Source: Octopus bimaculoides
Taxonomy: Eukaryota
DNA length: 64,000 bases
Direction of reading: 5' to 3'
Assembly: GCF_001194135.2 (NCBI RefSeq)
Contig: NC_068993.1
Span: 54,352,346-54,416,345 of the forward strand
Positions within the stretch are counted from its first letter, which is position 1. Each line of letters opens with the position of its first letter. This document shows, in pieces, positions 2,032-59,743 of the stretch. A program made the translations under genes and the position numbers. The notes under the pieces were generated by a model. The model saw only the letters and a program-made list of their open reading frames with translations. It had not been told where the DNA came from and searched no databases.

Positions 2032-2169
2032 CTACAAACAAAAAGAAACATTATAAATAGAAAGGAAACAAAACATACAAATAAGAATTTTCATTTAGTT
2101 GCATTCCATTTATTGGTCATATTTTATTGAGAAATATAGAAATGTCTAACAATTGATAAGAATAATTCT

Positions 2170-10085: not shown

Positions 10086-10194
10086 TCAGTGATAGACACA
10101 TATACATACATATAAACATACACACATATGTAATTTGTGAAGGGGAATTACAGTGTTATAGTCTTCCAATAATAGAGAAATGTCCAATACTCAC

Positions 10195-10293
10195 TGAACC
10201 AGCAATATCTACATCAGCATGTTTACCAAGCAAAGCCTTGACGATATCAACGTGACCTCCTTTCACAGCATGAATCAATATTGTATCACTCGC
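10195..10293 (-). CDS. KIDINS220: KIDINS220 exon, ankyrin repeat 8 ([33 protein letters not shown])
   Basis: 99 bp, CAG/GTGAGT. Confidence 0.95.
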
Positions 10294-10511
10294 CTGGACA
10301 GAAAGAAAAAAAAAAAGAAAAAATATAAACAACAATATCAGACAATTCCTTAACCTTTTCGTTACCAACCCGGCTGAAACCGGCTCTGGTTCTGCAGTAC
10401 AAATGTCTTGTTTTCAAGTTCTAAATTAAAATCTTTCACCAAATCTTAGTCACAATTTATGCTCCTAACACCAGCTTAATGATAACTAAGTTATTTTACT
10501 AAATTCTGGTT

Positions 10512-10680
10512 GGGCAGAAGACAGGGGCTGGCTAGGCAGAAGACAGTGGTTGGCTAGGTAGAAGACAGGGGCTGGCTAGGTAGAAGACAGGGGCTGGCTA
10601 GGTAGAAGACAGTGGTTGGCTAGGTAGAAGACAGGGGCTGGCTAGGTAGAAGACAGGGGCTGGCTAGGCAGAAGACTGCA
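10512..10680. repeat. 22-bp minisatellite GGTAGAAGACAGGGGCTGGCTA, about 7.5 copies
   Basis: Direct reading of the sequence. Confidence 0.95.
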
Positions 10681-10855
10681 CTAGGCTCCACTGTCTGTTT
10701 TGGCAGGGTTTTTATGGTTGGCTGCCCTTCCTAAAACCAATATATAGTTATCTACAATTATATTTTCTAGTAGTTATGGACATCAAGAAACAACAACAAA
10801 AAACTTCACAAAATATTAGAAATATTAAGAGTAAAATAGTGAAAATGTGACTAAC

Positions 10856-10954
10856 TTTATCAACAATGTTAACATAAGCTCCTTTGGCTAGAAGAGCCTG
10901 TGAGATTTCAGTGTAACCTTCTTTGGCACTGATAGCAAGGGCTGTGAAACCATC
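10856..10954 (-). CDS. KIDINS220: KIDINS220 exon, ankyrin repeat 7 (DGFTALAISAKEGYTEISQALLAKGAYVNIVDK)
   Basis: 99 bp, TAG/GTTAGT. Confidence 0.93.
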
Positions 10955-11189
10955 CTAAAGGAAACAAAGCAGACAAATAGCATTGGTTATTCGTGTAATT
11001 TGTGGAAATTAATGAAAAATAATAAAACAAAAAACTTAACAACAAAACTCAACTGCATGTTTCAAAACATGAACAAAATTGTTAACTCATTTCTGTTTAT
11101 AGAAAACAAACAAGAAAAATATATATCATTTCTGACCCTCACAACATCTTAAAGATATAAACCAAGATTTTTCTGACAATTAAATATTC

Positions 11190-11375
11190 TTTCTACTTTT
11201 GGGGTTGATGTAATTGACTGCAGTACTTGATTGGTACTTATTTTATTTTATTGGCCTCGAAAGGGTGAAAGGCAAAGTTGACAAGAGTGGCATTTGAACT
11301 CAGAAACGTACAGAGCTGGAAGAAATGCTACAAAGCAATTCGTCTGGAACGGTAATGATTCTGCCAGCTTGCTAC
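11190..11375 (-). mobile_element. Nin-domain-type SINE, degraded
   Basis: Reverse-complement similarity to 45443-45655. Confidence 0.6.
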
Positions 11376-20405: not shown

Positions 20406-21679
20406 CATAGGCATGCAGGAAGTAAACAGACATCTTTAATTTTCAAAATCTTTTATTTAATACACAAAGTGAAGAATTGAAATGTAATCGATAGGTAGGA
20501 CTACATACTTTTGTATTTAGTTGACATTCCCTTTGCAGTTTTTAATTCAGAAACTCTTTTTGGCATTGAACAGATGAGCTTTGTGATTGTCTCTTGTGGA
20601 ATTTCTGCCCACTTTTCACGCAACAATCGAAATAATTCATCTTTAGATTTAGGTTTCTGTCAAGCTTTTCACATAGCTCTATCTAGTATGCTCCAAAGAC
20701 TTTCAATTGGGTTCATGTCAGGAGATTGGCTCAGCCAAGGAAGCTTTTTGATCCCATTTTCAGTCAGCCATTGTTGATTCCTTTCACTGTGTGGCATGGA
20801 GCCCCATCTTCCATGAATAAAAACTCATTTTTCGTTATTTTATCATATAAATACATCAGAAGTAGTCCTTGCTTAAGTATTTCGATGTATTTTTCAGAGT
20901 TTATGGTTCCAACACATTCGATCAGCTCAGAACGATCATTGCTGGTGACAGCTCCTCATACCATTACAGAGATGCTGCCATGTTTCACAGTTGGTTGGAG
21001 TCGTTTCAAATCAAATTCTTGATTGGGAAGCCTCCAGACCCAAACACGTCTACTGTCTGAAAATAATGCAAACCTGGATTCATCTGAGAAAATCACTCTA
21101 TCCCAAAATGAACTGGATTTTTCAGACATCTCCTTAGCCCATTTCTTTCTTTTCATGATATTAATTGGTTGAAGGAGAGGTTTTCTTCTAGCTGTTTGTC
21201 CATAATACCCAAGCTTATGCAGATATGTAACGCACGTTCTTGGACTAACTGCTAGCTTTTTTGCAATGTCAGAAGCCTTCGAATGGGGTTTGTTTTCCAC
21301 AATTCTCTTCAAACAGTGAAGCTTCCTTTCTGAGGGTCCAGGTTGGCTGGGACGAGAATCTGTTGATTCTTTTCCTTGGTTTTTGAATTGCACTATAATT
21401 CTATTAACAGTTGCAAGAGGAATTTGAAGACTTTTGGCAATATTTCGCTGGCTAAGGCCAGCCTCAGATTGCCCAGCAATATGACTTCTTTGAAAATCTG
21501 ACAGTTCTGCTGAACTTTTTGCGTGTGGCATGGTTACTCTTCGCAAATGTTTAATATAATGGCATCTGGAATGAAAAAGAATAATTACATTGTAAATTCT
21601 ACACCCCTGAAAACATTAAGATGCTTAGATCAGAAATTTTGAAAATTAAAGGTGTCTATTTACTTTCTGCATGTCTGTG
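20406..21679 (-). mobile_element. Tc1-family (DD34E) DNA transposon, full length, transposase inactivated
   Basis: About 45-bp imperfect TIRs (CAYAGRCATGCAGRAAGTAAA...) flanked by TA. Transposase from about 21531 with paired-type [21 protein letters not shown] and SPDMNPIE; TGG>TGA stop at 20956-20958 and a later frameshift. Confidence 0.92.
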
Positions 21680-29200: not shown

Positions 29201-31343
29201 CCCACCCTGAAAGGGGACATTCCAAGCTCAACAGAAGGTCCATTTTAGTTGCAAAAGGATGAACAATAGAACGAGAGAGAGAGAGATCATAGTGGTAGTA
29301 ATGACGTCTTTAATGTACCTGGACAAACTATCATTACATTTGTCTTTTCTCTTCTTCGGTAAGCATTATTGGAAAAGGTAGTACAATTAATGCAAGAGGA
29401 CGTAGTTTCGACTCTTCCCGGGCCTTTCACTCATTTTAAAGAGTTCTGATGTTGCTATAAACAATATACTTCGATAATGGATGTTGTGAATTTTAGTCCA
29501 CACCAAGCTGAATTCCTCTTTCAGCCACCCAGAGCTTATTCCAGTCATGAAATGTGTCGAACCAATTGACTAAGAACCAGGAATAAATTGTGAAAGAATG
29601 GTCAGTGCCTTCACTAATTTATCATTATTAATGATGTTAGTCAACACAAGAGGGAATAGGAAATTGCATCTAGGTTTCAATCCTTAGCTACCAAACTTTT
29701 GTTCATAATTAACTGTGTAATTTCATATTTAAGAAATTATATTATTATTCTGACAGAATAAAACAACCTTAATATATAGTAGCACGTTACTCCAATCACG
29801 AGTTTCGATTTAAAAATATGAGTCAAGTTGAGTAGGATACACACAAACACACACATTGGAAATTAGTTTGTATAATCATTCCTTGAATATTAAAACTGAT
29901 TTCTGTTGTTTAGAGAGATGGCAGGTTAATAACAAATTTAGGAATAAAACAAGAAATATTTTTTCTTCGAAGAAACGTTGGAGTTCACGTCTCCAGAAGT
30001 TACGAGTATTTGAATATTTTGACTTATTTACAATCAATTCCACAATAACTGATAGAACACAAACAGAAATATTTTATCGCAAAACCTGACAGAAAGTGCT
30101 CCAGTTAAGATGTAAACGATATTTAAATGTAGAGAGAGAGAGAGAGAAAGAGAGAGAATATAAGATTTAATTCAAAAATGAAATACATAAAATTTGTGCA
30201 CCAGGTCCGAGACCGGGTTTTGTGTAGAAGTGGTGGTGGTGCGTGCGTGCGTGCATGCATGTGTGTATGCGTGAGTGTACGCATTGTGTATATGTGTGTG
30301 CGTACGCGTGCGAAAAATGAGTTGTTTTCTTTGGCGCTGGAAAAATAATAATTAGATAAAAGAGGTCGATTCAATGACACTCCGATGAACCAAGGAATAA
30401 TAGTGCACACCAATTAAATCGAAGTACTATTTCTGTTTCCTATATGAATACACCGAAAGAGTGTTAGCAAAAATAAGTACTCACCATGTGACTTAGGTGG
30501 TCCGATCTAGTCTTCACTTTGATTATAGAGAGGAGTAATTAAGCAAGACATTAAAACTGCCACCATTGGAGTGTTGACAAAAGATTTCATATAATTACTA
30601 TTCGTGTCCGTTATAAATGAAAATCATAGAAACCGTAGGGTATATATCTCACGTAGAGGTGGAAACAGAGACAGAGAATGTCATAATGAGATGATTTACT
30701 ATAAATATAAAGTTAAAACACACAGAAGTGTGTTTGTGTGTTGTTTACATGTTGGTAAAAATTAGATAACTTTCGCATGCAAAACGCAATATTGTTCTTC
30801 CGGTGTCATAAATAAGTATGTCTTCATTAGTCTTATCGTCCACCGGTCATATGAATAGATATGTCACCTTCATTTTATATTTCTTCTATTCTCGTCAGAT
30901 GAATTCCTGGGAACGATAGCCTATACAAAAATCGGTGTAGTTTATATGAAAAGAGGGTTAGAAATATATAAATACTTAATATGTGTATTAGATTATATGT
31001 GCCAGGTGCTTGTCTCCAGAACTAATACTTAATGTAACTTTGTTTATGTAACAACAAATGGGAAGTTGTAATTTGATGTTAATAACCTTGCAAGCCGAGG
31101 TGATATATATAATAGTATATTCTGCAGTCTCGTAGACTACTTTTAACGTTGCTCAGCAAATTTAATCATTGGTGACATAACTCGCATACGCATCTATCTA
31201 TCTATCTGTCTGTCTGTCTGTGTATGTATGTATGTATGTATGTATCTGTGTGTATGTTGGACAAAACAAAAGAAAACACCACTTTGTATTTAACTATTTG
31301 CTTTCTATTGGCAGTACGACATATTCAAAACTGTTGCAGTCTG

Positions 31344-36393: not shown

Positions 36394-37787
36394 AGGCGGC
36401 GGACTAGCAGAAACGTTAGCACACCAGTCGAACTGCTTCGCGGTATAACGGCTCTGTGAATTATTGTGAATACTATTGTGTTACTTTGTGAAAACTGTCG
36501 GTGAATAATTGTGATTTTTGTGGAATTATTACGGTTGCATTTCACGCGAGCTGCTGCATTTTTCCCAGCTATGGCAAGTGGTAGTGTCTCCAGTATGGAG
36601 AGCTACGCCAAAGCCACTGCGGTGAGGAAGCCAGCGCTGCTAGAAACCAAGTTAATCAAGTTGGATATGGAGGAGGTGACCAGAAGCAGGAATTTGATAG
36701 AAGTTGAGGGAGACTCGTACAAATTGTGTCCCCCAAAAGAGACTAAAGAAAATAAAATTCTGAGGACAGTAGTGTATCGTACACAGGCTGTCGAAACTGG
36801 TAAAATTGAAATGGTGACGGAAGAGGAAATCGAGGAGTGCCTGGGTGAAATTGTCAATGAAGCCACGTACATCAATAGAGGAAGAAAGTTCTGTACGGTT
36901 GAGGTGAGGTTCGCCACTGTAGAAGAGGCAACCAAGCCTGCGACCAACATTTTAAGAAGTGAGAAAATAGCATTGCTACCAAGTTATAGAGGAAGAAGAA
37001 GTGTGAAAATACGAATTCCCAGAGTTACACCAGAAATTAAACCAGAGTNNNNNNNNNNNNNNNNNNNNNNNNNNNNNNNNNNNNNNNNNNNNNNNNAGTA
37101 CGAGAATTGCGAGCAGATGGAGAGAAAAGTCGAGAGGTTAAAAGAAATAATAAGAGTGAAAATGCCAGAGAAATGTGCTGAAAAATGCATTTTGATACGT
37201 GAGGAAAGATGCTTCGGGTGCATAAAAGAACTTGGTGAAAATATAATAACGAAACGGATATGGTTGGTGGAGACACCACCCCCTAGAACTGATTATTTGC
37301 AGTTGTTAAGGACGGACGTAACAATGATTAATGGAAGAAAGGTAACGCGAGTGTTTGGATTTTTTGAGTTACAAAACCGTTAAAATGTTTACATGACGTT
37401 GAACGTAAAAGTGAAAAACTGGATAAATGTAACCACCCGACTTCGGGGATCGAGTGGATATTGCGCCTCATTTTTTTTACATTCTTGCATATAGTCATTT
37501 TATTTTAATTACCCCGATTTTATGTTTGCGTTTTCTACTGTCTTTATGTTTTGTGATGTCTTAAAAATTCTTTGTATAGCCCTTTATGGGTAATAAAGAA
37601 ATCGGCATTTCGTCTGCCGTTACGTTCTGAGTTCAAATTCCGCCGAGGTCGACTTTGCTTTTCATCCTATCGAGGTGGAATGAAATAAGTACCAGTTACG
37701 CACTGGAGTCGATGTAATCGACTTAATTCCGTTGTCTACCTTTGTTTGTCCTCTTTATGTTTAGCCCCTTGTGGGCAATAAAGAGAC
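36394..37787 (+). mobile_element. Nin-domain-type tRNA SINE split by the insertion
   Basis: Perfect 14-bp TSD AAGATGTTTAATTA at 36380-36393 and 37788-37801; core GTCGACTTTGC..CATCC..GAGG. Confidence 0.85.
36447..37602 (+). mobile_element. Non-autonomous LINE derivative carrying an ORF1-like frame, inserted in a SINE
   Basis: ORF 36571-37383 (contains a 48-N gap) with RRM-like TVEVRFATVEEA; interrupts a SINE at cggtat/cggcat; ends in an AATAAAGAAAT tail. Confidence 0.6.
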
Positions 37788-42143: not shown

Positions 42144-43277
42144 TCAAAAGGATAAGAGGGAAATATTTGAGTAGCACTTTATAGGAGAATCGTTAGATCC
42201 TCTATCGGTAAATTCTTTTGCCTGACAATCACTGGAATTGCAGAGAGGATTTCTACCTGATCGTACTGATTCTGAAGAGCTTTCTAATTCATAGTTTTCA
42301 GTTAGAATGCGTCCTTTACGATTCTTTTGAGTCATTGCTATGGAGTGGTTCTGCTTGGACGAAAAGCCATCTTTATGTTTGCCTCTTTCTTTTAGATTGG
42401 CATTGAAATAAGCACAGGCATTGGTATACCATTCTTTCTTCGAATTCCATGTCATAAAGGAGGTGATTTCTTCAGCAACTGTCTCAACACGCCATAATTC
42501 TAGGAGCCGCCGATACAACTCTCCATTTCCATGCTTCTGGAACGTCTTTTCCATACTTTCATCAATTTTCTTGTATTTCGTTGCACTTTTTTGCACCTTA
42601 TGAAGAAGCATCAAAGTCTCTGCTTTGAAGCAGAGGGGTATAAGATACTCCCCTAGTTCTGCTAGTGCTGATATATCGCCACAAGGAGCATTACTGGCTG
42701 AAAGAATATTCAAAACAGTAGCTGCTTGGTTGCTCCAGTTCATATTTATTTTGGCCAGTTGAAAGTTTTTTAAAGCGCGCCAGAATGAGTGTTTTCGTTT
42801 CGTGAGGTTAGCAATACGTTCCTCCTGCAGCATATCGTACACCTTACGGGCATCCACCCTGAGATTTTTGTCCTCCAACGATTCATTGGTGTTTGAAGAT
42901 TCACAAGGTAACTGCGACAAATTCGAGGACGTTACTGGCGACTGGTTCATGATGGAATTAGTGTCATTGAATGTTGGTGAACTGGTGTGAGGTAGAACTA
43001 TGCCGACCATTGAGGGACAATCATTGTCATCACTTGCGTGTGAACGCATTTCTTGTTGTTGTAAGATATTTGCTTCACCGTTGCTGTCCCGACAGAGGTG
43101 AAGCTGCAGTGGAGTACACCTCTCCACTGCAGCTGTCAAGTTTCGATCGTGGTTCATGCTCATTGCTGCCGAGAAAATATCGCAGCTCTCTTCACTGTCG
43201 GTGAAATTTGAGGAGCTCGTTGATGGCGAGACAGTAAAAATCATGCTGTCATGGTTTTCCATCTCAGGAATCTCCAT
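42144..43277 (-). CDS. Intronless uncharacterised protein A (377 aa from the ATG at 43277), paralog of 49397-50914
   Basis: Uninterrupted ORF over 1.1 kb in AT-rich DNA; ungapped similarity to ORF B (81/137 identical); no transposon motifs recognised. The track start at 43328 is GTG. Confidence 0.78.
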   Translation of the reverse strand: MEIPEMENHDSMIFTVSPSTSSSNFTDSEESCDIFSAAMSMNHDRNLTAAVERCTPLQLHLCRDSNGEANILQQQEMRSHASDDNDCPSMVGIVLPHTSSPTFNDTNSIMNQSPVTSSNLSQLPCESSNTNESLEDKNLRVDARKVYDMLQEERIANLTKRKHSFWRALKNFQLAKINMNWSNQAATVLNILSASNAPCGDISALAELGEYLIPLCFKAETLMLLHKVQKSATKYKKIDESMEKTFQKHGNGELYRRLLELWRVETVAEEITSFMTWNSKKEWYTNACAYFNANLKERGKHKDGFSSKQNHSIAMTQKNRKGRILTENYELESSSESVRSGRNPLCNSSDCQAKEFTDRGSNDSPIKCYSNISLLSF

Positions 43278-43366
43278 CTTTGTCGAGTAGTCGCAATGTA
43301 AGGGATATAAACGTTGGATAAAAATCACACGCAGTTCAATCCTTTCCCTACATCACTTCCTTTCTG

Positions 43367-43378
43367 TATGACGTCATA
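43367..43378. promoter_or_regulatory. CRE palindrome TGACGTCA (extended TATGACGTCATA) about 90 bp upstream of ORF A
   Basis: Exact 12-bp palindrome; ETS-like CACTTCC just left of it. Function is inferred. Confidence 0.45.
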
Positions 43379-44116
43379 AGCAAACTAATAACTAACTCCT
43401 CCTCCTCTCTCACTTCATCATGCAATACCAACATCTCAGCAGACGACAGCAACACAGTCTGTGAGTTCTAGCGGATATTTATTCTTCCTTTTTCAGCCTT
43501 CTTTTTATTCCTCGTCGTTTATCCTCTCCTAGGAAAACAGTCACCTCTTCATGATGTTTCATGTTTTAATGTCCTTATATGTGTGTGTGTATGTGTGCGT
43601 GCGTGTGTGTGTGTGCGTGTGTGTGTGTGTGTGTTTGTGTGTGTGCGTGTGCGTGTAGGTGATGGTAGTGGAGTTGCTATATTGGGGACGGCAGCAGTGG
43701 CGGTGGTGGTATAATGCTGGTAGATTGTGTATTGGCGTAGTGAGTTGGTATAGTAATGGTGGCCATACGATGGTCTAATGAAATTCGTATGCAGTGCAGT
43801 GGAGGTACATATGCAAACGAAAATACTAAGTGGGGAAAAAGATCTACATGGACACGTGAAAAACATTGTTTAAAAAAAAAAATTAATTTGCAAGCTTCAA
43901 CTTCTTACATTCCATGTCACTGCATGGATAATCACTTCCAAACACCCAGAAACACAAGCAAATCCCCAGAGCACAATCGCAACAACATCTGCTTGCCCAC
44001 TCACCCTAAACAAGCCTAAGGAACACATACGAAAACTGACGTGTACTGAGGGGTAAACTTCTTACGATAAGGGCAGAAGAATAACACGTTTTGTTTAGAA
44101 CGAGGACTTCCACTAG

Positions 44117-44260
44117 AGGCGCTTGGCTTAGTGGTTAGGGAGTTGTGCTTTCGATTCCGGGACCGGGCGACGCGTTGTGCTTTTTTTTTTAAAGCAAAAC
44201 ACTTCATTTCATGTTACTCCAGTCCACTGAGCTGGCAAAAATGAGTAATCTTGCGACGGC
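44117..44260 (+). mobile_element. tRNA-derived SINE head (second family)
   Basis: GGCGCTTGGCTTAGTGGTTAGGG..TTCGATTCC. Confidence 0.7.
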
Positions 44261-44454
44261 GGGGATTTATACGTCAGGGAAGCCGGTCCTTATGAGTCGA
44301 CATGACTCTAGAAGATGACTATTACTCTACCTTTTACTGAGTCCTTCTTACCCATCTCTACAGTGGCCACAACATGAACCTATGGGTCACACAGATTGTA
44401 ACCCAGCAACTCGGATGCACACGACATTCCACCGGTTATAACGGTGTGAGTTCC

Positions 44455-44745
44455 AGTTGATTCGCTCAACGGAACAGCCAGCTCGTGAAATTATCGTGCA
44501 ACTGGCTGAGAATTCCACAGACACGCGTACACTAAACCTAGTTCTCAGGGAGATTCAGCGTGACACAGAATGTGACAAGGCTGTCTCCTTTGAATTACAA
44601 GTATAACACATTTTTGCCGGTTTAGTGGACTGGAGCAACGTGAAATAAATTGTCTTGCTCAAGAACACATCGCGCTACCGGGAATCGAACATTCGACTAC
44701 GATCGAGAGCCGAATATCCTAACCATTAAGCCAAACGCCTGCACA
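44455..44745 (-). mobile_element. tRNA-derived SINE (second family)
   Basis: Similar to 35746-36048. Confidence 0.75.
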
Positions 44746-45442
44746 CACAGTCAATATACCAATAAATGCACCATCACATAACCAAACTGACATACTACTC
44801 CTGATGCTTTACGAACACACACCCTACCTTCACTGCACCGCATAAGACTTTCATTAGGCCACCATGACGAAACCAACTCACTACGCCAATACACAATTTA
44901 CCAGCATTGTACCACCACTACTGCCATAGCAGCAACTCTCACCACCATCACCTACACGCCAAGACATTAGCACCATCGTTGTAGTAAGACACTACCACCG
45001 TGACTATTATACCAGCACACCACACTACTGTTACCCTTACATCAACACACACACACACCACTCATCACTGTACTAACGCAATATAATTTATGTTAAGACC
45101 AGGCGATCTCTCTCGTTTTCAGGCTGTGGATTGTTTCTTTGCAGGAAATATTCTCGACTCGGTTCCGGACACCATTTGTAACTGTTTTCTCTTCTGTTAC
45201 CCAAACACTTCCAAATGCGGACTTAACTGTCGCTTGTGCGCTTCTATATGGCACATAAGATTGTGGTTATTTCTCCGCCAGGTAGAAAATAGGAAATTGC
45301 TTGTATAACAAGTATTCACAAACGTCAGAAACTGTAAAGGAGTGCAAAGAAAAATGCGTGGATCCAACGGAACTTGAACACAAGGTGAGCTCCTTCTGAA
45401 CAGAATATATACTTCCGGCCATGACAATTTCATCTTTAATAG

Positions 45443-45655
45443 AGGCAGTGAGCTGGCAGAAACGTTAGCACGCCGGGCGAAATGCTTAGCGGTATTTCGT
45501 CTATCTTTACGTTCTGAGTTCAAATTCCGCCGAGGTCGACTTTGCCTTTTTATCCTTTCGGCATCGATAAATTAAGTACCAGTCGCTTACTGAGGTTGAT
45601 CTAATCGACTGGCCCGCTCCCCCCCCCCCCAAATTTCGGGCCTTGTACCTAGAGT
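45443..45655 (+). mobile_element. Nin-domain-type tRNA SINE (well preserved)
   Basis: GAGCTGGCAGAAACGTTAGC...GAGTTCAAATTCC...GTCGACTTTGCC. Confidence 0.8.
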
Positions 45656-47447
45656 AGAAAAGAATATAGGCAGTGTATATAGGACATGATATCTGCTATG
45701 TTAAACTCGTTGTAAGACAATAGATGATTTAGGGAAGATTAGTTTTCTATTTCTAGCATGTCAAGCGACCACGTAGAGGCTCTTTGGTTGAACGTATTTA
45801 AGTATGTTTAACATTTGTCTTCGTTGAACTCCAAACAATGAAATACTCGCACCAAACGGACTATCGAGGGTGCATTTATATGGTTTCTCGTTTAACTAGC
45901 CAGAAATAGCAGCCAGATCATATCGTACCCTCTCAGAGGATGGAATGATACATTTGATAATCTAGTTCTAGAGAAACTGTAGAGAAATCACGGTAGAGTA
46001 GTGGCTGAAACGTTTCGATCGTAAGTATGTCTACTCGGTCGTGTCTGACTTGGCGCCAAACAACAGAAACAATTACAACCATTTTGGAGTCTGATTTAAA
46101 ACTGAAGGGGGAAGAAATGCGCAAGGATGCCGAGGGAGAGAGATAGGGCTTAGATTTGACTATTGCAATGTTAGAAAGAGGCACAGAGAATGGTATCAAC
46201 AAAGGTCTGCGAATGTTGTTGAGAGAAAAAAAATAGGGTCAACTCCAGTTTCAGATCCGGACAAAATTTTTTTTTAAATAGCGTAATATGTGTAAAACTT
46301 TTTTTTGTTTTGGTGTGAAACCGGAGTGTAACCGAAAATACAATACTATGGGAGGACATGGTGCTATGATTGATACGTGGAAGGTGTCTCATCCAGAAAT
46401 AAGGATGCAGAGCACGGACAGTAATATGTCGTGATTCACGAACAGGAATATGTCAACCCACAGACAATAACATTTTAGAAGGGTATAAAGTCGACTGAAT
46501 CTATCATAAAGCTTGCCTAGAACTAATTTTATTGGCCCAAAGCGAAATATCAAAACTTTTCCCTGTCGGGATTTGAACTAAGAACGTAACCACACTCCAG
46601 ATTTTTATAATATACCATACACATAACTGCGGGAACGAAATTTGCTTGGAGGGTGCAAACCCAGATTTTTAGGAGGAAGTTCAAAGCGTTTACATTGCCC
46701 CTCCCCCAACCTCGCTACAAATTTCCCGACCATGACCATAAAGTATTTTAACCCTACTCTTTTGATTTTTTTACTATCAATCGCCTCTTTTATAGTAATT
46801 TTTCATTCTTTTTAACCTCTGATGATATTTATAGGTAAATTATATTCAGCTTTATTCATGCAAACGCAATATGAATCGTTAGTTTTTTTTAAAAATATTT
46901 CCAATAAAAACAAATGTCGTGGCGATGAACGGGACGTTATACAACGGCATCAGAAATTTACATACAAATTAAGAAACAATCATAAATGCATATAAAGACA
47001 ACACATAATAAATGTTTTAAATACTTTCTTTAAAAATGAAGACAAAAAGCAACAACAGTAGCAGCCGCAACAATAAAAATATAAAAGTGTTGAGTGAAGA
47101 AAGTTCCTCTTTATTGAAACCATCTGTAATAGCAGGCAGACTCCAGTAAAGTGTAAATATACATCTAGACTATAATTAATTGCTATTTTTTAACCAGGCA
47201 CATAGGAAGGGCTATCGTCTATGTATGGCTCTACCACAGAATATCACTGGTACTTGTATTAAGGCACCGTCATAGGTTAACTTCATCGCGAGATGAAAGT
47301 TTTTCTTTTATTCTTGTTTAAAAAAACATAAAAGGGATTTAAATTGCAAATATTTTCTCTGTTTTAGAGAAACTTCCGTCAGATTTGTCCGTTTCTTTGG
47401 GAACGCTGTGTGTGTGTGTGTATATGTATGTTGGATTAGATATGTAC

Positions 47448-47480
<33 letters not shown>

Positions 47481-47876
47481 CATGTACGTACGAATGTATA
47501 TATGCATGCGTGTGTGTGTCTGTGTGTGTATCTATGTCCGTGCGCGTACGTGTGTGTGTCAGTAATAATATCAATAAATCTATGTATCGTATACCATGGG
47601 TTTAACAGAGATCCTCAGTAAATGTAAATTATAGGGATACAAATAGCATGGAGTGAATTTATATAGTCTCACACACACATGCACACGCATTGTATATGTA
47701 CATATATGCATATATATTATATATATATATAGTTGGGAAAAGATTAGAGGTCTATACAAATAATTTTTTTTATAAATGAAAGATGGAGGTGGAAATAGCA
47801 CAGAAGTAAATCTAAAACATTTCAATTTAAGAAGGAATTTAATAAAAAGGATTTTTAAAATTATATATATAAAAAA

Positions 47877-47919
47877 AATTTTACCGGTTTCGATAATGAA
47901 TTTCATCTTATCAAATATC
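47877..47919 (-). ncRNA. Hammerhead-like motif with U3-A8 core (left arm of foldback)
   Basis: GAUAU-UUGAUAA-GAUGA loop UUAUC-GAA-ACCGGU-A; palindromic stem III ACCGGU. Confidence 0.5.
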
Positions 47920-48014
47920 AGTAAAAATTTATAAAAAATTTAAGTAAAAACGTGTTTGTGACCCCGAGACAGAAGTTAAATTGTTTTTACTTTAAATTTT
48001 TATAAATTTTTACT

Positions 48015-48057
48015 GATATTTGATAAGATGAGATTCATCATCGAAACTGGTAATATT
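48015..48057 (+). ncRNA. Hammerhead-like motif with compensatory U3-A8 core (right arm of foldback)
   Basis: GAUAU-UUGAUAA-GAUGA loop UCAUC-GAA-ACUGGU-A-AUAUU. Confidence 0.5.
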
Positions 48058-48364
48058 TTCTTTATATAATTTTTAAAAATAGCTTTTATTTGATTCCTTC
48101 TTAAATTGAAATGTCTTAGATTTACTTGTGTCATTTCCACCTCCATCTTATAAGATGTATGTACATATATNNNNNNNNNNNNNNNNNNNNNNNNNNNNNN
48201 NNNNNNNNNNNNNNNNNNNNNNNNNNNNNNNNNNNNNNNNNNNNNNNNNNNNNNNNNNNNNNNNNNNNNNNNNNNNNNNNNNNNNNNNNNNNNNNNNNNN
48301 NNNNNNNNNNNNATACTACACACACACATACATATATATACGTACATACATATATATATATACA

Positions 48365-48397
<33 letters not shown>

Positions 48398-48472
48398 CAC
48401 ATTTATACATACATATATTTATGAATACATATATATGCATATATTTGCATGCATTATATATGTATAGATTAC

Positions 48473-48504
<32 letters not shown>

Positions 48505-49396
48505 ATATATGTTCATATGTGTATATTTCTGTTATATGCATATGTATCTATGTTTCGTAACGTGTCTATGTTAATGTATATACAGGTATATGTGTATATC
48601 ACATGCTATGTACTAGTATGTGTATATATATGCATGTTTAGGTTACGCACTATAAAGTATATAGTGCTTAAATGTTACGTAATGTGTATATACACGTGCA
48701 TACGTAATGTGTCGTCATACATGTATATACATTCTATCTAAGGTATATTCATATATAACAGCTTTTGCAGTTTTATGCACTACCTAGTATGGGTGAGTAT
48801 GGGTAACCTCTCTCCAAATATGGTTGATTCGCAGAGATTCTTGGAAAGAAGGGCACCACTGGGGGGTAATTCCTGAAAATATTCTGTTTGTTTGGTACAA
48901 ATTTGTATGTATGCTTTTGCCCTGTGTAAAAATATATGTGTATGTGTACGTGTGTGTGTGTTTGCAAGGGGGGGATAGAAGAGATAGAGGAGATTGACCG
49001 CACGCACATGCTTGTGATTAAGGGTGTGGTTCACAAATATCAGAAACATTCCACTGTGGAAAGTCTAATAAAACCACTATTTTCCATTCAACCTGTTTTT
49101 TTAAAATAAATATTTATGTATTCTTTTTTGATTTTTACTTTTCTCTTTTTAAATTTTTTTTTTTTTGTTAATGACTTTTCTTTTTTAAAAACACATTCTT
49201 CGTACCGAAACCAGAAGGCGAGATTAATCCTGAAGTAAGAAGAGAAGAAAGCTGGGTCAGTCAGGTATCAGATGTATCGTCCATCGGGAATGTCTGGGCA
49301 GACGATTTGATTTCACCACTTTGCTCGGAATAATTCACCAAGTCTTGTGGGAACCGAATTTGTAATATTTTGATTTTGGTTAAATTCGTTGTGGAA

Positions 49397-50914
49397 TCAC
49401 TTTAAGAATCTCCTAGCTCCACGACGCATATCAGCACAGTGTATCTCTCGCATGGCACTATAGGAATGGTTTGGATAATTATCATTCGAGAAATTCTTTT
49501 TCCTCTGGCAGTGTACGGTTCTGATGTGGCGTGTGGTTCGCCTGTAGTTCCTTTCAGTTTTTGGAGTCTTCGACTCCAGCGAATTCACGTGTATATAATT
49601 GCATTTTGCATTAGATTCTTTAGATTTTCTTTTGGTGACAATAACTGAGTCACTCCTAAATTTATAATTCCTTCCTTGATATTTCGTCTCTCTTGGATAA
49701 ACAGTTTGGCGAAAAGACCTACGTTTGGTTCGATTTGTAATTTGCTCAGGAAGTCTGGAGCGTTTTGATTGATCACTATTTATTTTCAGTTGCCAATTGA
49801 CATTCTTTCTGGAATCTCTTGGATCATTCTTGAAGCAGGACCAGACGTTATTACTATACCATTCTTCTTTTGAATTCCACGTCAAAAACGATGTAATTTC
49901 CTCAGCGTCTGTCCCAACACGCCATAACTCAATGAGGCGTCTACAAACTTCCCCGCTACTGTAAAATTTGAAAAGATTCTGCATGATTTCGTCAATTTGT
50001 TTATACTTGGAAATGTTTTTTTGAACTTTTTGCAGCAGAATCACTGTTTCCATTTTGAAACAGAGTGTCGTCAAACATTCTGCTAATTCTTCAATGGCTG
50101 ATTTACTCCCTTGAGACGTTTCAGTTGTAGAGATCATATACACTAGAGGTGGATTCACATTGCTCCAATTCATATTTAGTTCAGCTAAGTGAAAATTTTT
50201 TACTGCGTGCCAGAATGAATATTTCCTTTTCGTCAGGTTTGCCAAATGTTCAGTTTGAAGCATATCACTCAGAGACTGCACATGATAATGGATGTCATCC
50301 TCATTTGCTGAAGATATAGGAGAGGGATGCAATAAAAATGTCATTTCTGCTTCGTCAGTCTCTTCAGCCATTTCATCACTAGATATTTGTGAACCAGTCG
50401 ACGGCGAAACAGTAAATATCATACTTTGGTGGCTTTCGTTTTCATTATTAATATATTCCACATCGTTTTTAGTAGTTTCTCTTGTCTGATTAGCTTCGTT
50501 CAATGTGTCTTCTGCATCTTCTTGCGTTTCTTTTTCAAACTCTGGTAAAACCGGTAATGACAGTTCTTCGATGTTGTAATCATTATATTGGTTCGGCTCT
50601 TCAGAATAGTTCTCGTTATTCATATTCAAATCTTTATTCGAGGCGTGAATCGCTTTCGGCTCCATTATATCTCTTACTTCAGTCAGCTGATCTGCATCAA
50701 TAATTGTCTTCATTTCCATCAGTAGATTCTGCATCTTATCTCCGTCCAACTCGGCAATTTCTGTAAACATTGCATTGGAGAAAAGCTCCTCTCTCAGTTG
50801 TGCCATCATGACTTTGAGACCTTTATCGATTTGTTGGCTTGTATTCCGAAGCATTTTGTACATTTCACTCATATCTGACCGTGTTGGTCCAGATTTGAAG
50901 TGCAAGTGAGACAT
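49397..50914 (-). CDS. Intronless uncharacterised protein B (505 aa): acidic N-terminus, shared helical domain, basic C-terminus
   Basis: 1518-bp ORF; ATG in an A-rich context (AAAATAATG); paralogous to 42144-43277. Confidence 0.8.
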   Translation of the reverse strand: MSHLHFKSGPTRSDMSEMYKMLRNTSQQIDKGLKVMMAQLREELFSNAMFTEIAELDGDKMQNLLMEMKTIIDADQLTEVRDIMEPKAIHASNKDLNMNNENYSEEPNQYNDYNIEELSLPVLPEFEKETQEDAEDTLNEANQTRETTKNDVEYINNENESHQSMIFTVSPSTGSQISSDEMAEETDEAEMTFLLHPSPISSANEDDIHYHVQSLSDMLQTEHLANLTKRKYSFWHAVKNFHLAELNMNWSNVNPPLVYMISTTETSQGSKSAIEELAECLTTLCFKMETVILLQKVQKNISKYKQIDEIMQNLFKFYSSGEVCRRLIELWRVGTDAEEITSFLTWNSKEEWYSNNVWSCFKNDPRDSRKNVNWQLKINSDQSKRSRLPEQITNRTKRRSFRQTVYPRETKYQGRNYKFRSDSVIVTKRKSKESNAKCNYIHVNSLESKTPKTERNYRRTTRHIRTVHCQRKKNFSNDNYPNHSYSAMREIHCADMRRGARRFLK

Positions 50915-51054
50915 TATTTTATTGTTTCTACCCCGTCTTGTCGACTATCGATGATACTTGTACAAAATATAACCGTCAAAGAACATAATAAAACAAAACA
51001 AAACAAAAACTAATTCTGCGACAAACGCAGCTTCACGTTGAACATGGTGCTAAG

Positions 51055-51069
51055 CCACGTGTCACGTGG
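51055..51069. promoter_or_regulatory. Tandem E-boxes CCACGTGTCACGTGG about 140 bp upstream of ORF B
   Basis: Two CACGTG hexamers 1 bp apart in a CpG-rich upstream region. Confidence 0.45.
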
Positions 51070-52689
51070 TTTCACAAACAACAAGATTTTCCGAAGCAAC
51101 ACATTCTAACGGTTATTCCTCGTTGTTCCGTAACTGACGTTAAAGATTTCACGAACAGATTCGATTTCCTTCCCATAATTTTCTTAGTTATAAATCACAA
51201 ATATTTAGTTAACAAGTTAATAATATCGAGCAACAATATATATTGTATTGCTTCAATGAGCTTGTTGACTATTTCGTATTAGAGTATGAGACAATGAAAT
51301 AAATTACAATAGAGCCACTATCTACATTTTGTGGTATTAAACTTCATTTCCTTACATTTTGAGTTCAAAACACACAGTGATCGATCTCGCATTAAAAACA
51401 TTGTCGAGGGTTCGGTAAAATAAATTCCATTGAAGTCATTATTACTAAGTTATTATTGCGAACTTTGTTATAAAATTTATACTATAAAATATATTACGAT
51501 AGTGGAATGACAACGCAGATAGAATACTCTAATAGACGTCTTTCGGCGTATAGTTAGGTCACTTTACGTCCTGAGTTCAAATCTTGCTAGGGCCTCGTTA
51601 ATTCCAAATACTTCTCCGTTTAATAATAATAATAAAAAAAAGAAAGAAAAAGAAACCCAACAGATATGTACCAACGTTAAAAATTTATATTTTACTATTA
51701 AAACACATGTGTACACTTCCTCAGGGAATAAATTGTAAATTCTCACATGATAGGAACAAGCACTGGACAACTGGAACAATCAAGATTTGTCTCCTGTCAC
51801 CGGAACTGCATCGTAAAGGTTCACAACTGACAATTTATGATTGTTTTCTGACCCTTTTTAGCATCCTATTGTGGGTGATATTTAGCTTTTAACTCGATGT
51901 AAACTAGGGTTAAACCCTGGGTCCGTAAGATTTGTGAAGAAAAATGACCTTTTTTGATACAGATATCATTAAAAATTAATTGTATAGCAGAAGGCACGGG
52001 AAAGGAAGGGAAGTAACTCATAACGACAGCGGCATAATAGTTTTTAAAGATTTACGTCCCCTGTAATTTTTTTTTAAGCAAAAGCCAATAAATAAATAAT
52101 TTCAAAGATAACATTGCTGAAAATTGGGAAATGAAAGAGTAAAATCTAACAATAACAACAACATCAACATCTACTACTACTACTACTATGACGACGACAA
52201 CGACGTCGAAGTGATGCCAGGCGGAACGACCAACTTGCGAGCAATGAAACAAGTAAGTTAGTTTAACATAGAGGCAAAAGTGAATAGCGTGAAACTTATA
52301 CAAAAATTTGGGACTACCCCCAAAATACGTACCACATCACGCTCTATAGTGCATGCCGAAACTGCAAAACTGAATCACTTGAGGCCAGGCTTCCCGTGAA
52401 TGGATTCACCCGTCGAGAGAGAAAAAGGGACGCTTTAGCATGCTGTTCATTGAATTAGCGAATAAACTGGCCGAGGGTTCCACAGACACACGCATCTTTA
52501 ACGGGATACTCAAGCAGAATCAGTGTGACAAGGCTACACATTTGAATCACCTGTAGAGTCTACTTAACAGGTTTCTAAATACTGTCCATTGACATAAGCT
52601 TTGCACACGCACATAAATAATTGTGATGGTGATGAGGCAGCAACTCTTGATGGAATTGTAGGGATGCTGATTTCTTTCAGTGTGTCTGT

Positions 52690-52967
52690 GTGTGTAAGAG
52701 AGAGAGAGAGGAGACAGGAGAGTGTGTGTGTGTGTGTGAAGGACTGTGTGTGTGTGTGTGTGAGGAACTGTGTGTGTATGTGTGAGAGAGAGAGTGTGTG
52801 TGAGGGACTGTGTGTTATGTGAGCGAGAGTGTGTGTGAGGGCTGTGTGTGTATGTGAGAGAGAGAGAGTGTGTGTGTGTATGTGAGCGAGAGTGTATGTG
52901 AGGGACTGTGTGTGTGTATGTGAGAGAGAGAGTGTGTGTGTGAGGGACTGTGTGTGTGTGTGAGAGC

Positions 52968-53003
<36 letters not shown>

Positions 53004-53005
53004 GA
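52690..53005. repeat. Compound (GT)/(GA) minisatellite with GAGGGACT spacers
   Basis: Direct reading of the sequence. Confidence 0.85.
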
Positions 53006-53182
53006 TTGACCCAGATCCATAATTAGTTCTATAGTAATTGCACTGGAAAAGATGAAAAGCAACAAAGTTTGCCTTGGAAGGAACTGAACTAACAACCCAC
53101 CAGAATGAACATGACAAAGCATTCTATTTAATATTGTAATGATTTTGTAATAATTATATATATGTATGGTTGTATGTTATAT

Positions 53183-57300: not shown

Positions 57301-57429
57301 TCAAATGCATATTACAGAAGATGTGACTGCTGTTGCATCTCAGTGCTGATACTTCCCTCGCAAACAATGAAATATGTTGTCCCACCATAATCCTCTACAA
57401 CAAATAACAACAACAAAAAGAATAAAATC

Positions 57430-57473
57430 TATCCCACCCCCTGCCAGATTACATGTATATATGTGTGAATGTA

Positions 57474-57506
<33 letters not shown>

Positions 57507-57633
57507 TGTGTGTGTTTATGTATGTGCATATGTATATATACACACACATACACATACATGTTTATGTGTGTATATACATGTATATACATATGTATATGTG
57601 TACATATATATATATATATACGTACATATGTGA

Positions 57634-57669
<36 letters not shown>

Positions 57670-57692
57670 GTGCATAAAAATGTATTTATGTA

Positions 57693-57778
<86 letters not shown>

Positions 57779-58583
57779 TGTATATGTATGTACATATATA
57801 TATATATCGATGTGTATATTATATATGTGTATGCATAGATTTTATATACATATGCCTTACATATATATACAAATACATATGTACACACATATATGTATGT
57901 AAATATATATATATGTACAAAATATATGTATGTATATACGTATACACATAAACATGTATATATGTATCTGTTCTGTTGATATGGTTTGGTTATGAATATT
58001 GATGGAAAAAAATGAATAATACAATGTAATAAACTGTTACTATCAAAATAGAGAGTAAAGATAAATTTCACATCTATATATATATATATATATATATNNN
58101 NNNNNNNNNNNNNNNNNNNNNNNNNNNNNNNNNNNNNNNNNNNNNNNNNNNNNNNNNNNNNNNNNNNNNNNNNNNNNNNNNNNNNNNNNNNNNNNNNNNN
58201 NNNNNNNNNNNNNNNNNNNNNNNNNNNNNNNNNNNNNNNNNNNNNNNNNNNNNNNNNNNNNNNNNNNNNNNNNNNNNNNNNNNNNNNNNNNNNNNNNNNN
58301 NNNNNNNNNNNNNNNNNNNNNNNNNNNNNNNNNNNNNNNNNNNNNNNNNNNNNNNNNNNNNNNNNNNNNNNNNNNNNNNNNNNNNNNNNNNNNNNNNNNN
58401 NNNNNNNNNNNNNNNNNNNNNNNNNNNNNNNNNNNNNNNNNNNNNNNNNNNNNNNNNNNNNNNNNNNNNNNNNNNNNNNNNNNNNNNNNNNNNNNNNNNN
58501 NNNNNNNNNNNNNNNNNNNNNNNNNNNNNNNNNNNNNNNNNNNNNNNNNNNNNNNNNNNNNNNNNNNNNNNNNNNNNNNNNNN

Positions 58584-58618
<35 letters not shown>

Positions 58619-59042
58619 CATATATACATATACATACACACAGACACACACTCACACATCAGTGGCATTTCCTGGATAAAATCAAGGCACGCAATGACAT
58701 GCACAAGTTGTGATAGTGAATGCATAATAGAACGAAATCAATTTTTAAGTAAATCCTTCAGTTTTCACAAGTGATACCTGGAAAGTGGGTACATGCAGGC
58801 TATGTGTACACCCTATTTAAATTGTATGGTTTTTTTTTTTTTTTTTGATCTTTAAAATTGCATGCTCAGGTTTATGCACTAAGAAGCACCACTGATACAC
58901 ACATACATATATATGTATATATATGTGTGTATATATGAATATTGAATATGTACACATATACATATATGTGTGTGTGCGTGTGGATATATATATGTGTATA
59001 TATATATATATATGTGTATATATATAATATATATAATATATA

Positions 59043-59100
<58 letters not shown>

Positions 59101-59743
59101 NNNNNNNNNNNNNNNNNNNNNNNNNNNNNNNNNNNNNNNNNNNNNNNNNNNNNNNNNNNNNNNNNNNNNNNNNNNNNNNNNNNNNNNNNNNNNNNNNNNN
59201 NNNNNNNNNNNNNNNNNNNNNNNNNNNNNNNNNNNNNNNNNNNNNNNNNNNNNNNNNNNNNNNNNNNNNNNNNNNNNNNNNNNNNNNNNNNNNNNNNNNN
59301 NNNNNNNNNNNNNNNNNNNNNNNNNNNNNNNNNNAAAAAAAAAAAAAAAAAAAAGAATGGATTAAAAGACAACCAAAAAGAAAAAAAAAGGGTAAATAAA
59401 TAAATAAAAATAAGATGAATGAATAACAATTGGTTCCTCTCTCTTTTTGTTTGTAATAATTCTTGTTGTTGTTGGTTGTTTTCCGTGTTCTTATTGTTCT
59501 TCTAGTTTCATAATGCTTTGGACATATTGTATTATCTGGGTTGTGTTATCTTCTTTCCTTTCATTATGTCTTGTTCTTTTGTTTCCATTCCATCCATCCA
59601 TCCCCCAGAGTATATCATACAAATAAGAGTTTTGGCTTGTAATAATAATAATTATTAATTTAATTAATTAATATTTGCTTCAGACCAGAAAGGGGATTGA
59701 AATGTTAGCGTGACAATGATTTGGTAAGTATTCTTATATATGG

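What the first reader, a model, noticed from the sequence alone, without database searches (positions are those of the whole stretch)
43218..50425. Isolated motif SMIFTVSPST identical in both paralogs, with only synonymous differences
Seen: A 43218-43247 reads AGC ATG ATT TTT ACT GTC TCG CCA TCA ACG; B 50396-50425 reads AGT ATG ATA TTT ACT GTT TCG CCG TCG ACT. That is six synonymous and no nonsynonymous differences in 10 codons. The motif sits 127 aa (A) versus 43 aa (B) before the shared domain, in otherwise unalignable sequence. This is direct evidence of protein-level selection. Inference: a short linear docking motif or proline-directed phosphosite.
Basis: partly seen in the sequence, partly recalled or inferred. 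Interest (0 to 1): 0.7.

Follow-up and report, generated by a model that had tools for sequence, protein, structure and literature searches.

The report
Conserved peptide motif in octopus paralogs
Two neighbouring octopus genes, apparently descended from the first gene of a Penelope-like jumping element, share a ten-residue peptide (SMIFTVSPST). It has stayed almost unchanged since before octopus and cuttlefish diverged, although everything around it has changed, so it is very probably a functional short peptide motif whose partner is still unknown.

Summary
Both copies lie on the minus strand in two intact ORFs: A (42144-43277) and B (49397-50914). They differ at six third-codon positions and at no amino acid. 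The assembly gap lies in the intergenic microsatellite between the genes and touches neither ORF.

Chance, recent duplication, gene conversion and a DNA- or RNA-level element are all excluded:
- Synonymous sites are saturated across both genes.
- Third-position identity in the motif (4/10) equals the gene-wide mean.
- The motif is the only 10/10 window and the longest identical run in the pair.

Cuttlefish orthologues keep it: A has SMIFTVSPST and B has SMIFTVSSST. Protein-level selection is therefore well supported, but the proline is not essential.

AlphaFold places the motif in a disordered acidic region, not docked on the protein's own domain. It fits no motif class that I tested.

The shared "family domain" is a confidently predicted helical bundle. 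It is homologous to ORF1 proteins that sit directly upstream of RT + GIY-YIG ORFs, which is the layout of Penelope-like retroelements. A, B and a third paralogue C are stand-alone, syntenic cephalopod genes, so they are probably domesticated ORF1 genes. The element-borne ORF1s lack the motif.

Best reading: a new short linear interaction motif with an unknown partner.

The parts
43218..43247 (-). Motif copy A: SMIFTVSPST, residues 11-20 of protein A counted from the ATG at 43277
50396..50425 (-). Motif copy B: SMIFTVSPST, residues 164-173 of protein B
43194..43277 (-). A-type N-terminal conserved block MEIPEMENHDSMIFTVSPSTSSSNFTDS. It is nearly identical in cuttlefish A (MEIPESEDHDSMIFTVSPSTSSSDFTDS), and the first 5 codons show 3 synonymous and 0 nonsynonymous differences
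42144..43277 (-). Gene A coding ORF (377 aa from MEIPE; the mechanical ORF begins at a GTG at 43328). The O. vulgaris model P0004 (99% identical) starts at MEIPE and uses a donor CAG|GTAGAA just after SESVRS (exon end about 42257)
49397..50914 (-). Gene B coding ORF, 505 aa and uninterrupted. It is called as a gene in O. vulgaris directly upstream of A
42387..42887 (-). A: shared helical-bundle domain, residues 131-297 (pLDDT about 98), homologous to Penelope-like element ORF1
49835..50302 (-). B: the same domain, residues 205-360
50663..50881 (-). B-only N-terminal helical region, residues 12-84. It is conserved in cuttlefish B, shared with paralogue C and absent from A
48477..51268 (-). Extent of B transcript-like contigs. 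Five independent Logan contigs are colinear with the window, and their unmatched first 29 nt begin exactly at an acceptor AG (51270-51269), which indicates a spliced 5'UTR
48171..48312 (.). Assembly gap in the intergenic TG/TA microsatellite between B and A. It is not part of either gene, and its flanks are colinear in O. vulgaris

Best explanation
SMIFTVSPST is a short linear peptide motif held by strong purifying selection. It sits in the disordered, acidic, Ser/Thr-rich region of two ancient tandem paralogues, A and B. These belong to a small gene family so far found only in coleoid cephalopods.

The family's helical-bundle domain is homologous to ORF1 of Penelope-like retroelements, so the genes are most likely domesticated ORF1 genes (inferred). 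The motif arose in the A/B lineage, possibly from a weaker I-[FL]-P-[VL]-D core still visible in paralogue C (inferred). The element-borne ORF1s do not have it.

Most likely mechanism (inferred, not shown): the hydrophobic, beta-prone core M-I-F-T-V is the only contact-competent patch in an otherwise polar segment. It docks as an added strand or short hydrophobic peptide onto a partner shared by both paralogues. The invariant flanking Ser/Thr residues and the acidic N-flank could tune that binding through phosphorylation. The proline is dispensable.
For: Shown:
- The 10/10 amino-acid identity comes with 6 synonymous differences.
- The motif is the only 10/10 window and the longest identical run in the pair; the next longest, inside the domain, is 7.
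- Codon positions 1+2 are 20/20 identical against a mean of 12.7. Position 3 is 4/10 against a mean of 3.9.
- pN is 0 in the motif, 0.52 in the linker and 0.24 in the domain, with pS saturated.
- Cuttlefish A (P0003, P0103-P0105) has SMIFTVSPST and cuttlefish B (P0002, P0100-P0102) has SMIFTVSSST, using different codons. By hand count on the four genes, that is at least 11 synonymous changes against 1 nonsynonymous.
- The motif is predicted disordered in both models, with pLDDT 36-44.
- In both B orthologues it is among the top hydropathy peaks before the domain. The surrounding regions have pI 4.1-4.4 and the C-terminal tails pI 9-10.9.
- None of the 63 more distant hits carries it.

Family context:
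- HMM search of 1.84 billion representative proteins gave 69 hits.
- hhalign of the cephalopod alignment against the element ORF1 alignment gave probability 99.4% and E 6e-22 over 154 columns.
- Homologues P0008, P0019 and P0011 lie immediately upstream of ORFs with RVT_1 and GIY-YIG.
- No such ORF2 lies near A, B or C in the window or in loci L007, L011, L012.
- The order B-A-KIDINS220 is the same in O. vulgaris.
- B has spliced transcript-like contigs.
- A, B and C form one clade apart from the element ORF1s.
Against: - No partner is known and nothing was tested biochemically.
- The motif matches none of the motif-class patterns I could write from memory: SUMO-interaction, LC3-interaction, FBW7, beta-TrCP, polo-box, RVxF, B56 and ABBA.
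- Orthologue sampling is thin. It covers only Octopus (window and O. vulgaris) and two or three cuttlefish, with no squid, Nautilus or vampire squid.
- In A the motif is not the strongest hydrophobic patch before the domain.
- The domestication reading rests on remote homology (23% identity in hhalign). The members of the element alignment were chosen by the same profile, which is partly circular. The taxa that host those elements could not be identified.
Confidence: 0.6

Rival explanations
1. The motif is an intramolecular or self-association element. It packs as a strand or short segment against the protein's own three-helix bundle or against another subunit, for example to regulate oligomerisation or to mask the basic C-terminal tail, rather than binding an external partner.
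For: The motif always travels with the same domain, and both are conserved. The opposite charge of the acidic motif region and the basic tail would allow autoinhibition. ORF1 proteins of retroelements generally multimerise (general knowledge, not tested here).
Against: In both AlphaFold2 monomer models the motif is coil with pLDDT 36-44 and is not placed on the domain, although the domain itself reaches pLDDT about 98. The distance to the domain differs roughly threefold between A and B, and A lacks B's N-terminal helices. Element-borne ORF1s with the same domain have no such motif.
Confidence: 0.2
2. The essential feature is a phosphorylation site or phosphodegron, either a proline-directed S-P site or a Ser/Thr cluster, with the hydrophobic residues serving only as kinase or ligase context.
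For: S-P is present in three of the four genes. S164, S170, S172 and T173 (B numbering) are invariant. The downstream sequence is rich in Ser and acidic residues.
Against: Pro is replaced by Ser in all four cuttlefish B sequences, so a strictly proline-directed site is not conserved. The invariant M-I-F-T-V run is longer and more hydrophobic than kinase consensus sites need. There was no match to FBW7, beta-TrCP or polo-box patterns written from memory.
Confidence: 0.15
3. The Met inside the motif is a conserved alternative translation start. What is conserved would then be an N-terminal MIFTV... signal, for example for N-terminal acetylation, targeting or a degron.
For: The Sepia pharaonis annotation (CAE1269485.1 = P0103) starts the protein at this Met. 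Both octopus copies have A at position -3.
Against: The residues upstream of the Met are conserved at the protein level. S and E-x-E are invariant across paralogues. MEIPE is identical between octopus and cuttlefish A despite 3 synonymous changes. The S. pharaonis genome encodes MEIPESEDHDS in frame upstream. In B the motif lies 163 residues into an ORF whose N-terminal helices are conserved.
Confidence: 0.04
4. The identity is not due to selection on the protein. It would instead reflect chance, recent duplication or gene conversion, or a conserved DNA/RNA element such as a splicing or regulatory signal.
For: None found.
Against: The shuffle test gave a maximum of 6 against the observed 10, with an expectation of 6e-8. 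Every nucleotide difference falls at a third position, and third-position identity equals the gene-wide background. pS is saturated in the motif and the flanks. The same peptide is encoded by different codons in cuttlefish.
Confidence: 0.01

Closest known systems
Short linear motifs (SLiMs / ELM-type docking motifs) in intrinsically disordered regions
   Same: It is about 10 residues long and forms an island of conservation in a predicted disordered, fast-evolving region. It has a hydrophobic core flanked by phosphorylatable and acidic residues, and its distance to the folded domain varies.
   Different: It matches no class I could test by pattern (patterns written from memory, not from the ELM database). 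Ten nearly invariant consecutive residues is long for a SLiM. No partner is known.
Phospho-regulated SUMO-interaction motifs (e.g. PML VVVISSSEDSD, RAP80 FIVISDSD; from general knowledge)
   Same: A four- to five-residue beta-prone hydrophobic core is followed by a Ser-rich and acidic stretch and preceded by acidic residues.
   Different: The core I-F-T-V has Phe where [VIL] is required, and both SUMO-interaction patterns fail. This is a resemblance only, not membership.
ORF1 of Penelope-like retroelements (PLEs; ORF1 with coiled coil noted in Craig et al. 2021, PMC8557442, Fig. 1 legend)
   Same: The helical domain of A, B and C is homologous to ORF1s directly upstream of RT + GIY-YIG ORFs. 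B and C also keep an N-terminal helix and B a basic tail, as the element ORF1s do.
   Different: A, B and C have no adjacent RT/GIY-YIG ORF. They were found only as single syntenic loci, are conserved between octopus and cuttlefish, and form their own clade. The element ORF1s lack the SMIFTV motif.
L1TD1, a mammalian host gene derived from LINE-1 ORF1 (from general knowledge)
   Same: It is a stand-alone host gene descended from the first ORF of a non-LTR-type retroelement, kept without the RT ORF.
   Different: The element class (PLE, not L1) and the fold are different, with no sequence relationship. This is an analogy only.

Membership tests
Short linear motif (generic definition) | Short stretch (about 3-12 residues) lying in an intrinsically disordered region | tested here: met
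   pLDDT is 36-44 with no secondary structure in two AlphaFold2 models. The context is acidic and Ser/Thr-rich.
Short linear motif (generic definition) | Conserved island relative to fast-evolving flanks, across orthologues and paralogues | tested here: met
   pN is 0 against 0.52 in the linker. It is the only 10/10 window. It is retained 10/10 in cuttlefish A and 9/10 in cuttlefish B.
Short linear motif (generic definition) | Mediates binding to a defined partner domain or serves as a modification site | not testable with these tools
Proline-directed phosphosite ([ST]-P) | S/T-P dipeptide conserved in orthologues | tested here: not met
   S-P is present in octopus A and B and in cuttlefish A. 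Cuttlefish B has S-S in P0002 and P0100-P0102.
SUMO-interaction motif (ELM LIG_SUMO_SIM, pattern from memory) | [VIL]-rich four-residue core in the psi-psi-x-psi or psi-x-psi-psi arrangement with acidic/Ser flanks | tested here: not met
   There is no regex match in any of the four sequences, because Phe occupies a [VIL] position. The flanks do fit.
LC3-interacting region | [WFY]-x-x-[ILV] core preceded by acidic or Ser/Thr residues | tested here: not met
   The core reads F-T-V-S, with Ser at the fourth position.
Penelope-like element ORF1 (as a protein homology family) | Significant sequence or profile homology to ORF1 proteins of PLEs | tested here: met
   The best remote hits to the 5-sequence profile have E 7.5e-12 to about 1e-10 in 1.84 billion proteins. 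hhalign gave probability 99.4% and E 6e-22. Three homologues were verified as adjacent to RT + GIY-YIG ORFs.
Penelope-like element (being part of an active or decayed element copy) | An ORF2 with RT and GIY-YIG directly downstream, and multiple dispersed copies | tested here: not met
   tblastn with three PLE ORF2s finds nothing in the window or in L007, L008, L011 or L012. The window holds only one copy each of A and B. The locus is syntenic with O. vulgaris.
Domesticated transposable-element gene | Orthologous, intact, selectively constrained copies at a syntenic locus in distant species | tested here: inconclusive
   Octopus and cuttlefish both have intact orthologues, with domain pN 0.21-0.31 against saturated pS. 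Synteny was shown only between two close Octopus genomes. In cuttlefish, 10-kb flanks did not reach the other paralogue.

The most novel reading that the evidence does not exclude
A, B and C are a coleoid-cephalopod family of host genes domesticated from the ORF1 of a Penelope-like retroelement. I found no report of such a domestication. After domestication the family acquired a new, nearly invariant docking peptide (SMIFTVS-x-ST) that links these RNA-binding-like proteins to a host pathway, for example retroelement control or RNA handling in cephalopod tissues.
Probability: 0.35. Interest if true: 0.65.

Novelty: new member of a known kind. Interest (0 to 1): 0.45.

Why it matters
The motif is a clean natural experiment. 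Two paralogues have diverged to saturation, one of them has lost the whole N-terminal region, and yet both keep one ten-residue peptide. That marks the peptide as the handle for finding what these uncharacterised cephalopod proteins bind.

The wider result is that the 'family domain', which has no Pfam or PDB relative, is the ORF1 domain of Penelope-like elements. This gives a first possible example of a host gene derived from PLE ORF1. It also provides a confident structural model, a three-helix bundle, for an ORF1 type that the literature describes as poorly characterised.

Tried and rejected
- Pfam scans of A, B, ten remote homologues and the 20-member element alignment gave nothing above threshold.
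- A PDB sequence search with the family profile gave no hit.
- Foldseek of both models against PDB, and of the good model against BFVD, returned only generic long-helix bundles such as Smac, syntaxin Habc and ExbB. E-values were at least 0.0025 and TM-scores were low.
- A third word-indexed protein search with the six-sequence alignment added no new orthologues, so squid and Nautilus retention could not be checked.
- Cuttlefish synteny could not be settled. Ten-kb flanks around cuttlefish B (L011) and S. pharaonis A (L012) did not contain the other paralogue.
- The organisms behind the element-bearing samples could not be identified from the literature.
- An exact look-up of the window's 394-aa A ORF found no record.
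- The 29-nt putative 5' exon of B transcripts was not found in the window at up to 3 mismatches.
- Motif-class regexes written from memory gave no specific match.
- The reading that MAFFT's alignment of A's 'EIPE' with B's 'LPE/MPE' is meaningful was dropped as too weak.


Full report
**1. The observation**

They lie in two long minus-strand ORFs:
- A: 42144..43328 as the mechanical ORF, 394 aa from a GTG. The biological start is very probably the ATG at 43277, giving MEIPEMENHDSMIFTV...
- B: 49397..50914, 505 aa.

The ten codons differ at six positions, all third positions and all synonymous. By the Nei-Gojobori method, Sd is 6.0 of 7.3 synonymous sites and Nd is 0 of 22.7 nonsynonymous sites. 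BLASTP of the two proteins gives the shared domain (47% identity over 198 aa, E 8e-55). It also gives a separate 18-residue match around the motif with 14/18 identities (E 7e-5), so the conserved block reaches a little beyond the ten residues: E-x-E-x-H-[DQ]-SMIFTVSPST-x-S.

**2. The gap**

The window has nine N runs. The one at 48171-48312 lies between the stop codon of B and the start of A, in TG/TA microsatellite. On Octopus vulgaris chromosome OX597826.1 the same region is colinear. The blocks ending at window 48322 and 48108 map 111 bp apart. The sequence is therefore continuous across the gap, and the gap does not affect either reading frame. Transcript-like contigs of B end at 48477, just before it.

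**3. More than chance, and not a DNA-level effect**

- In 5000 shuffles of the two pre-domain regions the longest shared substring never exceeded 6, against 10 observed. The expected number of exact 10-mers is 6e-8.
- With the motif masked, the longest identical run anywhere in the two proteins is 7.
- In a sliding window of ten aligned codons the motif is the only 10/10 window. Its first and second codon positions are 20/20 identical (gene-wide mean 12.7). Its third positions are 4/10 identical (mean 3.9).
- Synonymous sites are saturated everywhere (pS 0.7-0.85). pN is 0 in the motif, 0.52 in the linker, 0.24 in the domain and 0.58 in the C-terminal tail.

Recent duplication, gene conversion and a conserved DNA or RNA element are therefore excluded. 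What is conserved is the peptide.

**4. Orthologues**

Database searches found very few relatives:
- P0004 is an Octopus vulgaris hypothetical protein, 99% identical to A.
- P0001 is 99% identical to B.
- P0002 and P0003 are two proteins from one other sample. P0003 clusters at 90% with a Sepia (Acanthosepion) pharaonis protein, so that sample is a cuttlefish.

P0003 is the A orthologue. It starts MEIPESEDHDSMIFTVSPSTSSSDFTDS and has no N-terminal helices. P0002 is the B orthologue. It has the conserved N-terminal helical region, and its motif at residue 165 reads SMIFTVSSST. Further cuttlefish sequences agree, and the S. pharaonis genome encodes MEIPESEDHDS in frame ahead of the annotated start.

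The four genes use different codons. By hand count on the four-gene tree there are at least 11 synonymous changes and one nonsynonymous change, Pro to Ser in cuttlefish B. The A/B duplication thus appears to predate the octopus-cuttlefish split, which from general knowledge lies in the order of 250-300 million years ago. The rough NJ tree does not recover A as one clade (section 6), so this rests on the shared A-type N-terminal block and architecture. The motif has been held since then, while the linker around it is only about 20-30% identical even between orthologues. The proline, however, is not invariant.

**5. Structural context**

AlphaFold2 of B with a 5-sequence alignment gave the following:
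- N-terminal helices at 12-44 and 58-84.
- A helical domain at 205-360 with pLDDT 70-90.
- The motif in coil with pLDDT of about 36.

AlphaFold2 of A with a 49-sequence alignment gave these results:
- A very confident domain at residues 131-297, pLDDT about 98.
- Helices at 134-149, 151-183, 186-193, 202-249 and 252-297, which together form an elongated three-helix bundle.
- The motif (residues 11-20) again in coil, at pLDDT of about 42.

So there is no sign that the motif docks on its own domain in a monomer.

The regions before the domain are acidic (pI 4.1-4.4) and rich in Ser/Thr, and the C-terminal tails are basic (pI 9-10.9). In both B orthologues SMIFTVS is among the top hydropathy peaks before the domain. 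Patterns written from memory for SUMO-interaction, LC3-interaction, FBW7, beta-TrCP, polo-box, RVxF, B56 and ABBA motifs do not match. Only the generic S-P (absent in cuttlefish B) and low-information CK2/GSK3 patterns do.

**6. What the family is**

Neither protein has a Pfam match or a PDB relative by sequence or by fold. A full HMMER search of 1.84 billion representative proteins with the family profile gave 69 hits. The closest were P0005 and P0006:
- P0005 is O. vulgaris CAI9721000.1 on another chromosome, also present in Argonauta hians.
- P0006 comes from a cuttlefish-like sample.
- Together they represent a third paralogue, C, with a B-like N-terminal helix.
- At the same relative position C has SQSIFPVD in octopus and SALILPLD in cuttlefish. 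This is possibly a degenerate relative of the motif core.

The remaining hits (E 7.5e-12 to 1e-3) are 150-550-residue proteins with an N-terminal helix, the same domain and low-complexity basic tails. Three that I could place in their genomic context lie immediately upstream of an ORF carrying RVT_1 and GIY-YIG:
- P0008 in L006.
- P0019 in L009, where ORF2 starts 15 nt after ORF1.
- P0011 in L010, with the GIY-YIG end of a preceding copy upstream.

[quoted passage not shown] An ORF1 with a coiled coil is drawn for some PLEs by Craig et al. 2021 (PMC8557442). A 2025 study of a Neptune element found no database similarity for its ORF1 (PMC12602865). Profile-profile comparison of the cephalopod alignment with an alignment of 20 such ORF1s gives probability 99.4% and E 6e-22 over 154 columns.

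In contrast to those elements:
- A and B have no RT/GIY-YIG ORF anywhere in the window, and neither do the C locus or the cuttlefish loci.
- A and B each occur once in the window.
- The order B - A - KIDINS220-like gene is the same in O. vulgaris.
- Five independent contigs of B break exactly at an acceptor AG at 51270-51269, as expected of spliced transcripts.
- In a rough NJ tree of the domain, A, B and C form one clade, with C sister to A+B, separate from 40 more distant homologues. That tree does not resolve A as monophyletic, which I attribute to the fast-evolving cuttlefish A.

The most economical reading is a cephalopod gene family domesticated from PLE ORF1. None of the 63 more distant sequences carries the motif, so it is an innovation of the host-gene lineage.

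**7. How it most likely works**

Shown: the peptide is under strong purifying selection, it lies in a disordered acidic segment, it is absent from the element ancestors, and it is shared by two paralogues that otherwise share only the bundle domain.

Inferred: it is a docking motif. The beta-prone hydrophobic core M-I-F-T-V would bind a partner common to A and B. The invariant Ser/Thr residues and the acidic flank could modulate binding by phosphorylation. The layout recalls phospho-regulated SUMO-interaction motifs, but that pattern is not met.

The rivals are self-association, a phosphosite or degron as the essential feature, an alternative start at the internal Met, and non-protein explanations. 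They are weighed in the Rival explanations section. The last is refuted, and the alternative start is made unlikely by the conserved residues upstream.

**8. Novelty and verdict**

I found no description of this motif, of this gene family or of a domesticated PLE ORF1. The motif is a new member of a known kind, a short linear motif, in an undescribed family that is probably derived from a transposable element. Interest is moderate. The evidence for selection is unusually clean and the family origin is a useful by-product. The function remains unknown, and orthologue sampling is limited to two cephalopod orders.

Noticed in passing
window 1253-2041 (-): This ORF has a KAP family P-loop NTPase domain (E 1.3e-26). 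In O. vulgaris the gene next to A is a 1524-aa Ank-repeat / KAP_NTPase / SAM_KIDINS220 protein, so this is an exon of the KIDINS220-like neighbour.
   Followed up: partly
window 20956-21546 (-): A 196-aa ORF with Tc1/mariner-type transposase HTH domains (HTH_Tnp_Tc3_2, HTH_SB). It looks like a transposon remnant.
   Followed up: no
window 36511-37383 (+): A 290-aa ORF interrupted by the gap at 37049-37096, with no Pfam hit on its first 178 residues. Its N-terminus (...SMESYAKATAVRKP) resembles the 'TYAxVV'-type motif seen in the tails of the retroelement ORF1 proteins, so it may be another element-derived ORF.
   Followed up: no
window 30484-30568 (-) and L018 (O. vulgaris): The O. vulgaris model of A (P0004) splices after SESVRS to a terminal exon about 30 kb away, next to the start of KIDINS220. 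In the window the only similarity to that exon is a fragment with stops and frameshifts. The annotated last exon may be a repeat-derived mis-join, and the unspliced ORF end (stop at 42144) may be the real one.
   Followed up: partly
L012 (Sepia pharaonis CAHIKZ030001605.1) 9968-11116: The public annotation names this A orthologue 'FBN2_3' and starts it at the Met inside the motif. The genome has MEIPESEDHDS in frame upstream, so both the name and the start look wrong.
   Followed up: yes
L008 8001-8978 (cuttlefish-like assembly ERZ21867824): P0007 (325 aa) is a more distant family member (E 7.5e-12) in the same assembly that holds a B orthologue. It has no RT/GIY-YIG nearby and two unannotated flanking ORFs. 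It is either a fourth host paralogue or a decayed element.
   Followed up: partly
L007 (O. vulgaris OX597817.1) 10001-11263: Paralogue C (P0005) lies on a different chromosome from A and B and is also present in Argonauta hians. Its 90% cluster also lists unrelated 52-aa bacterial 'DUF2164' proteins, which looks like a clustering artefact of the database.
   Followed up: no
window 43549-43866, 47308-47621, 48000-48741, 52547-53122, 57374-59429: Long (CA/TG)n and (TA)n microsatellite tracts produce many spurious 'THTHTH' / 'YIYIYI' ORFs, and most of the assembly gaps sit inside them.
   Followed up: no
window vs L018 and L013-L017: Across 30-52 kb of the window, aligned blocks are about 85-94% identical in DNA to O. 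vulgaris OX597826.1, while protein B differs at no more than one residue. The RNA-like contigs from SRR118693xx are 93-97% identical. The window therefore probably comes from a close relative or a divergent haplotype of O. vulgaris, not from that assembly itself.
   Followed up: partly
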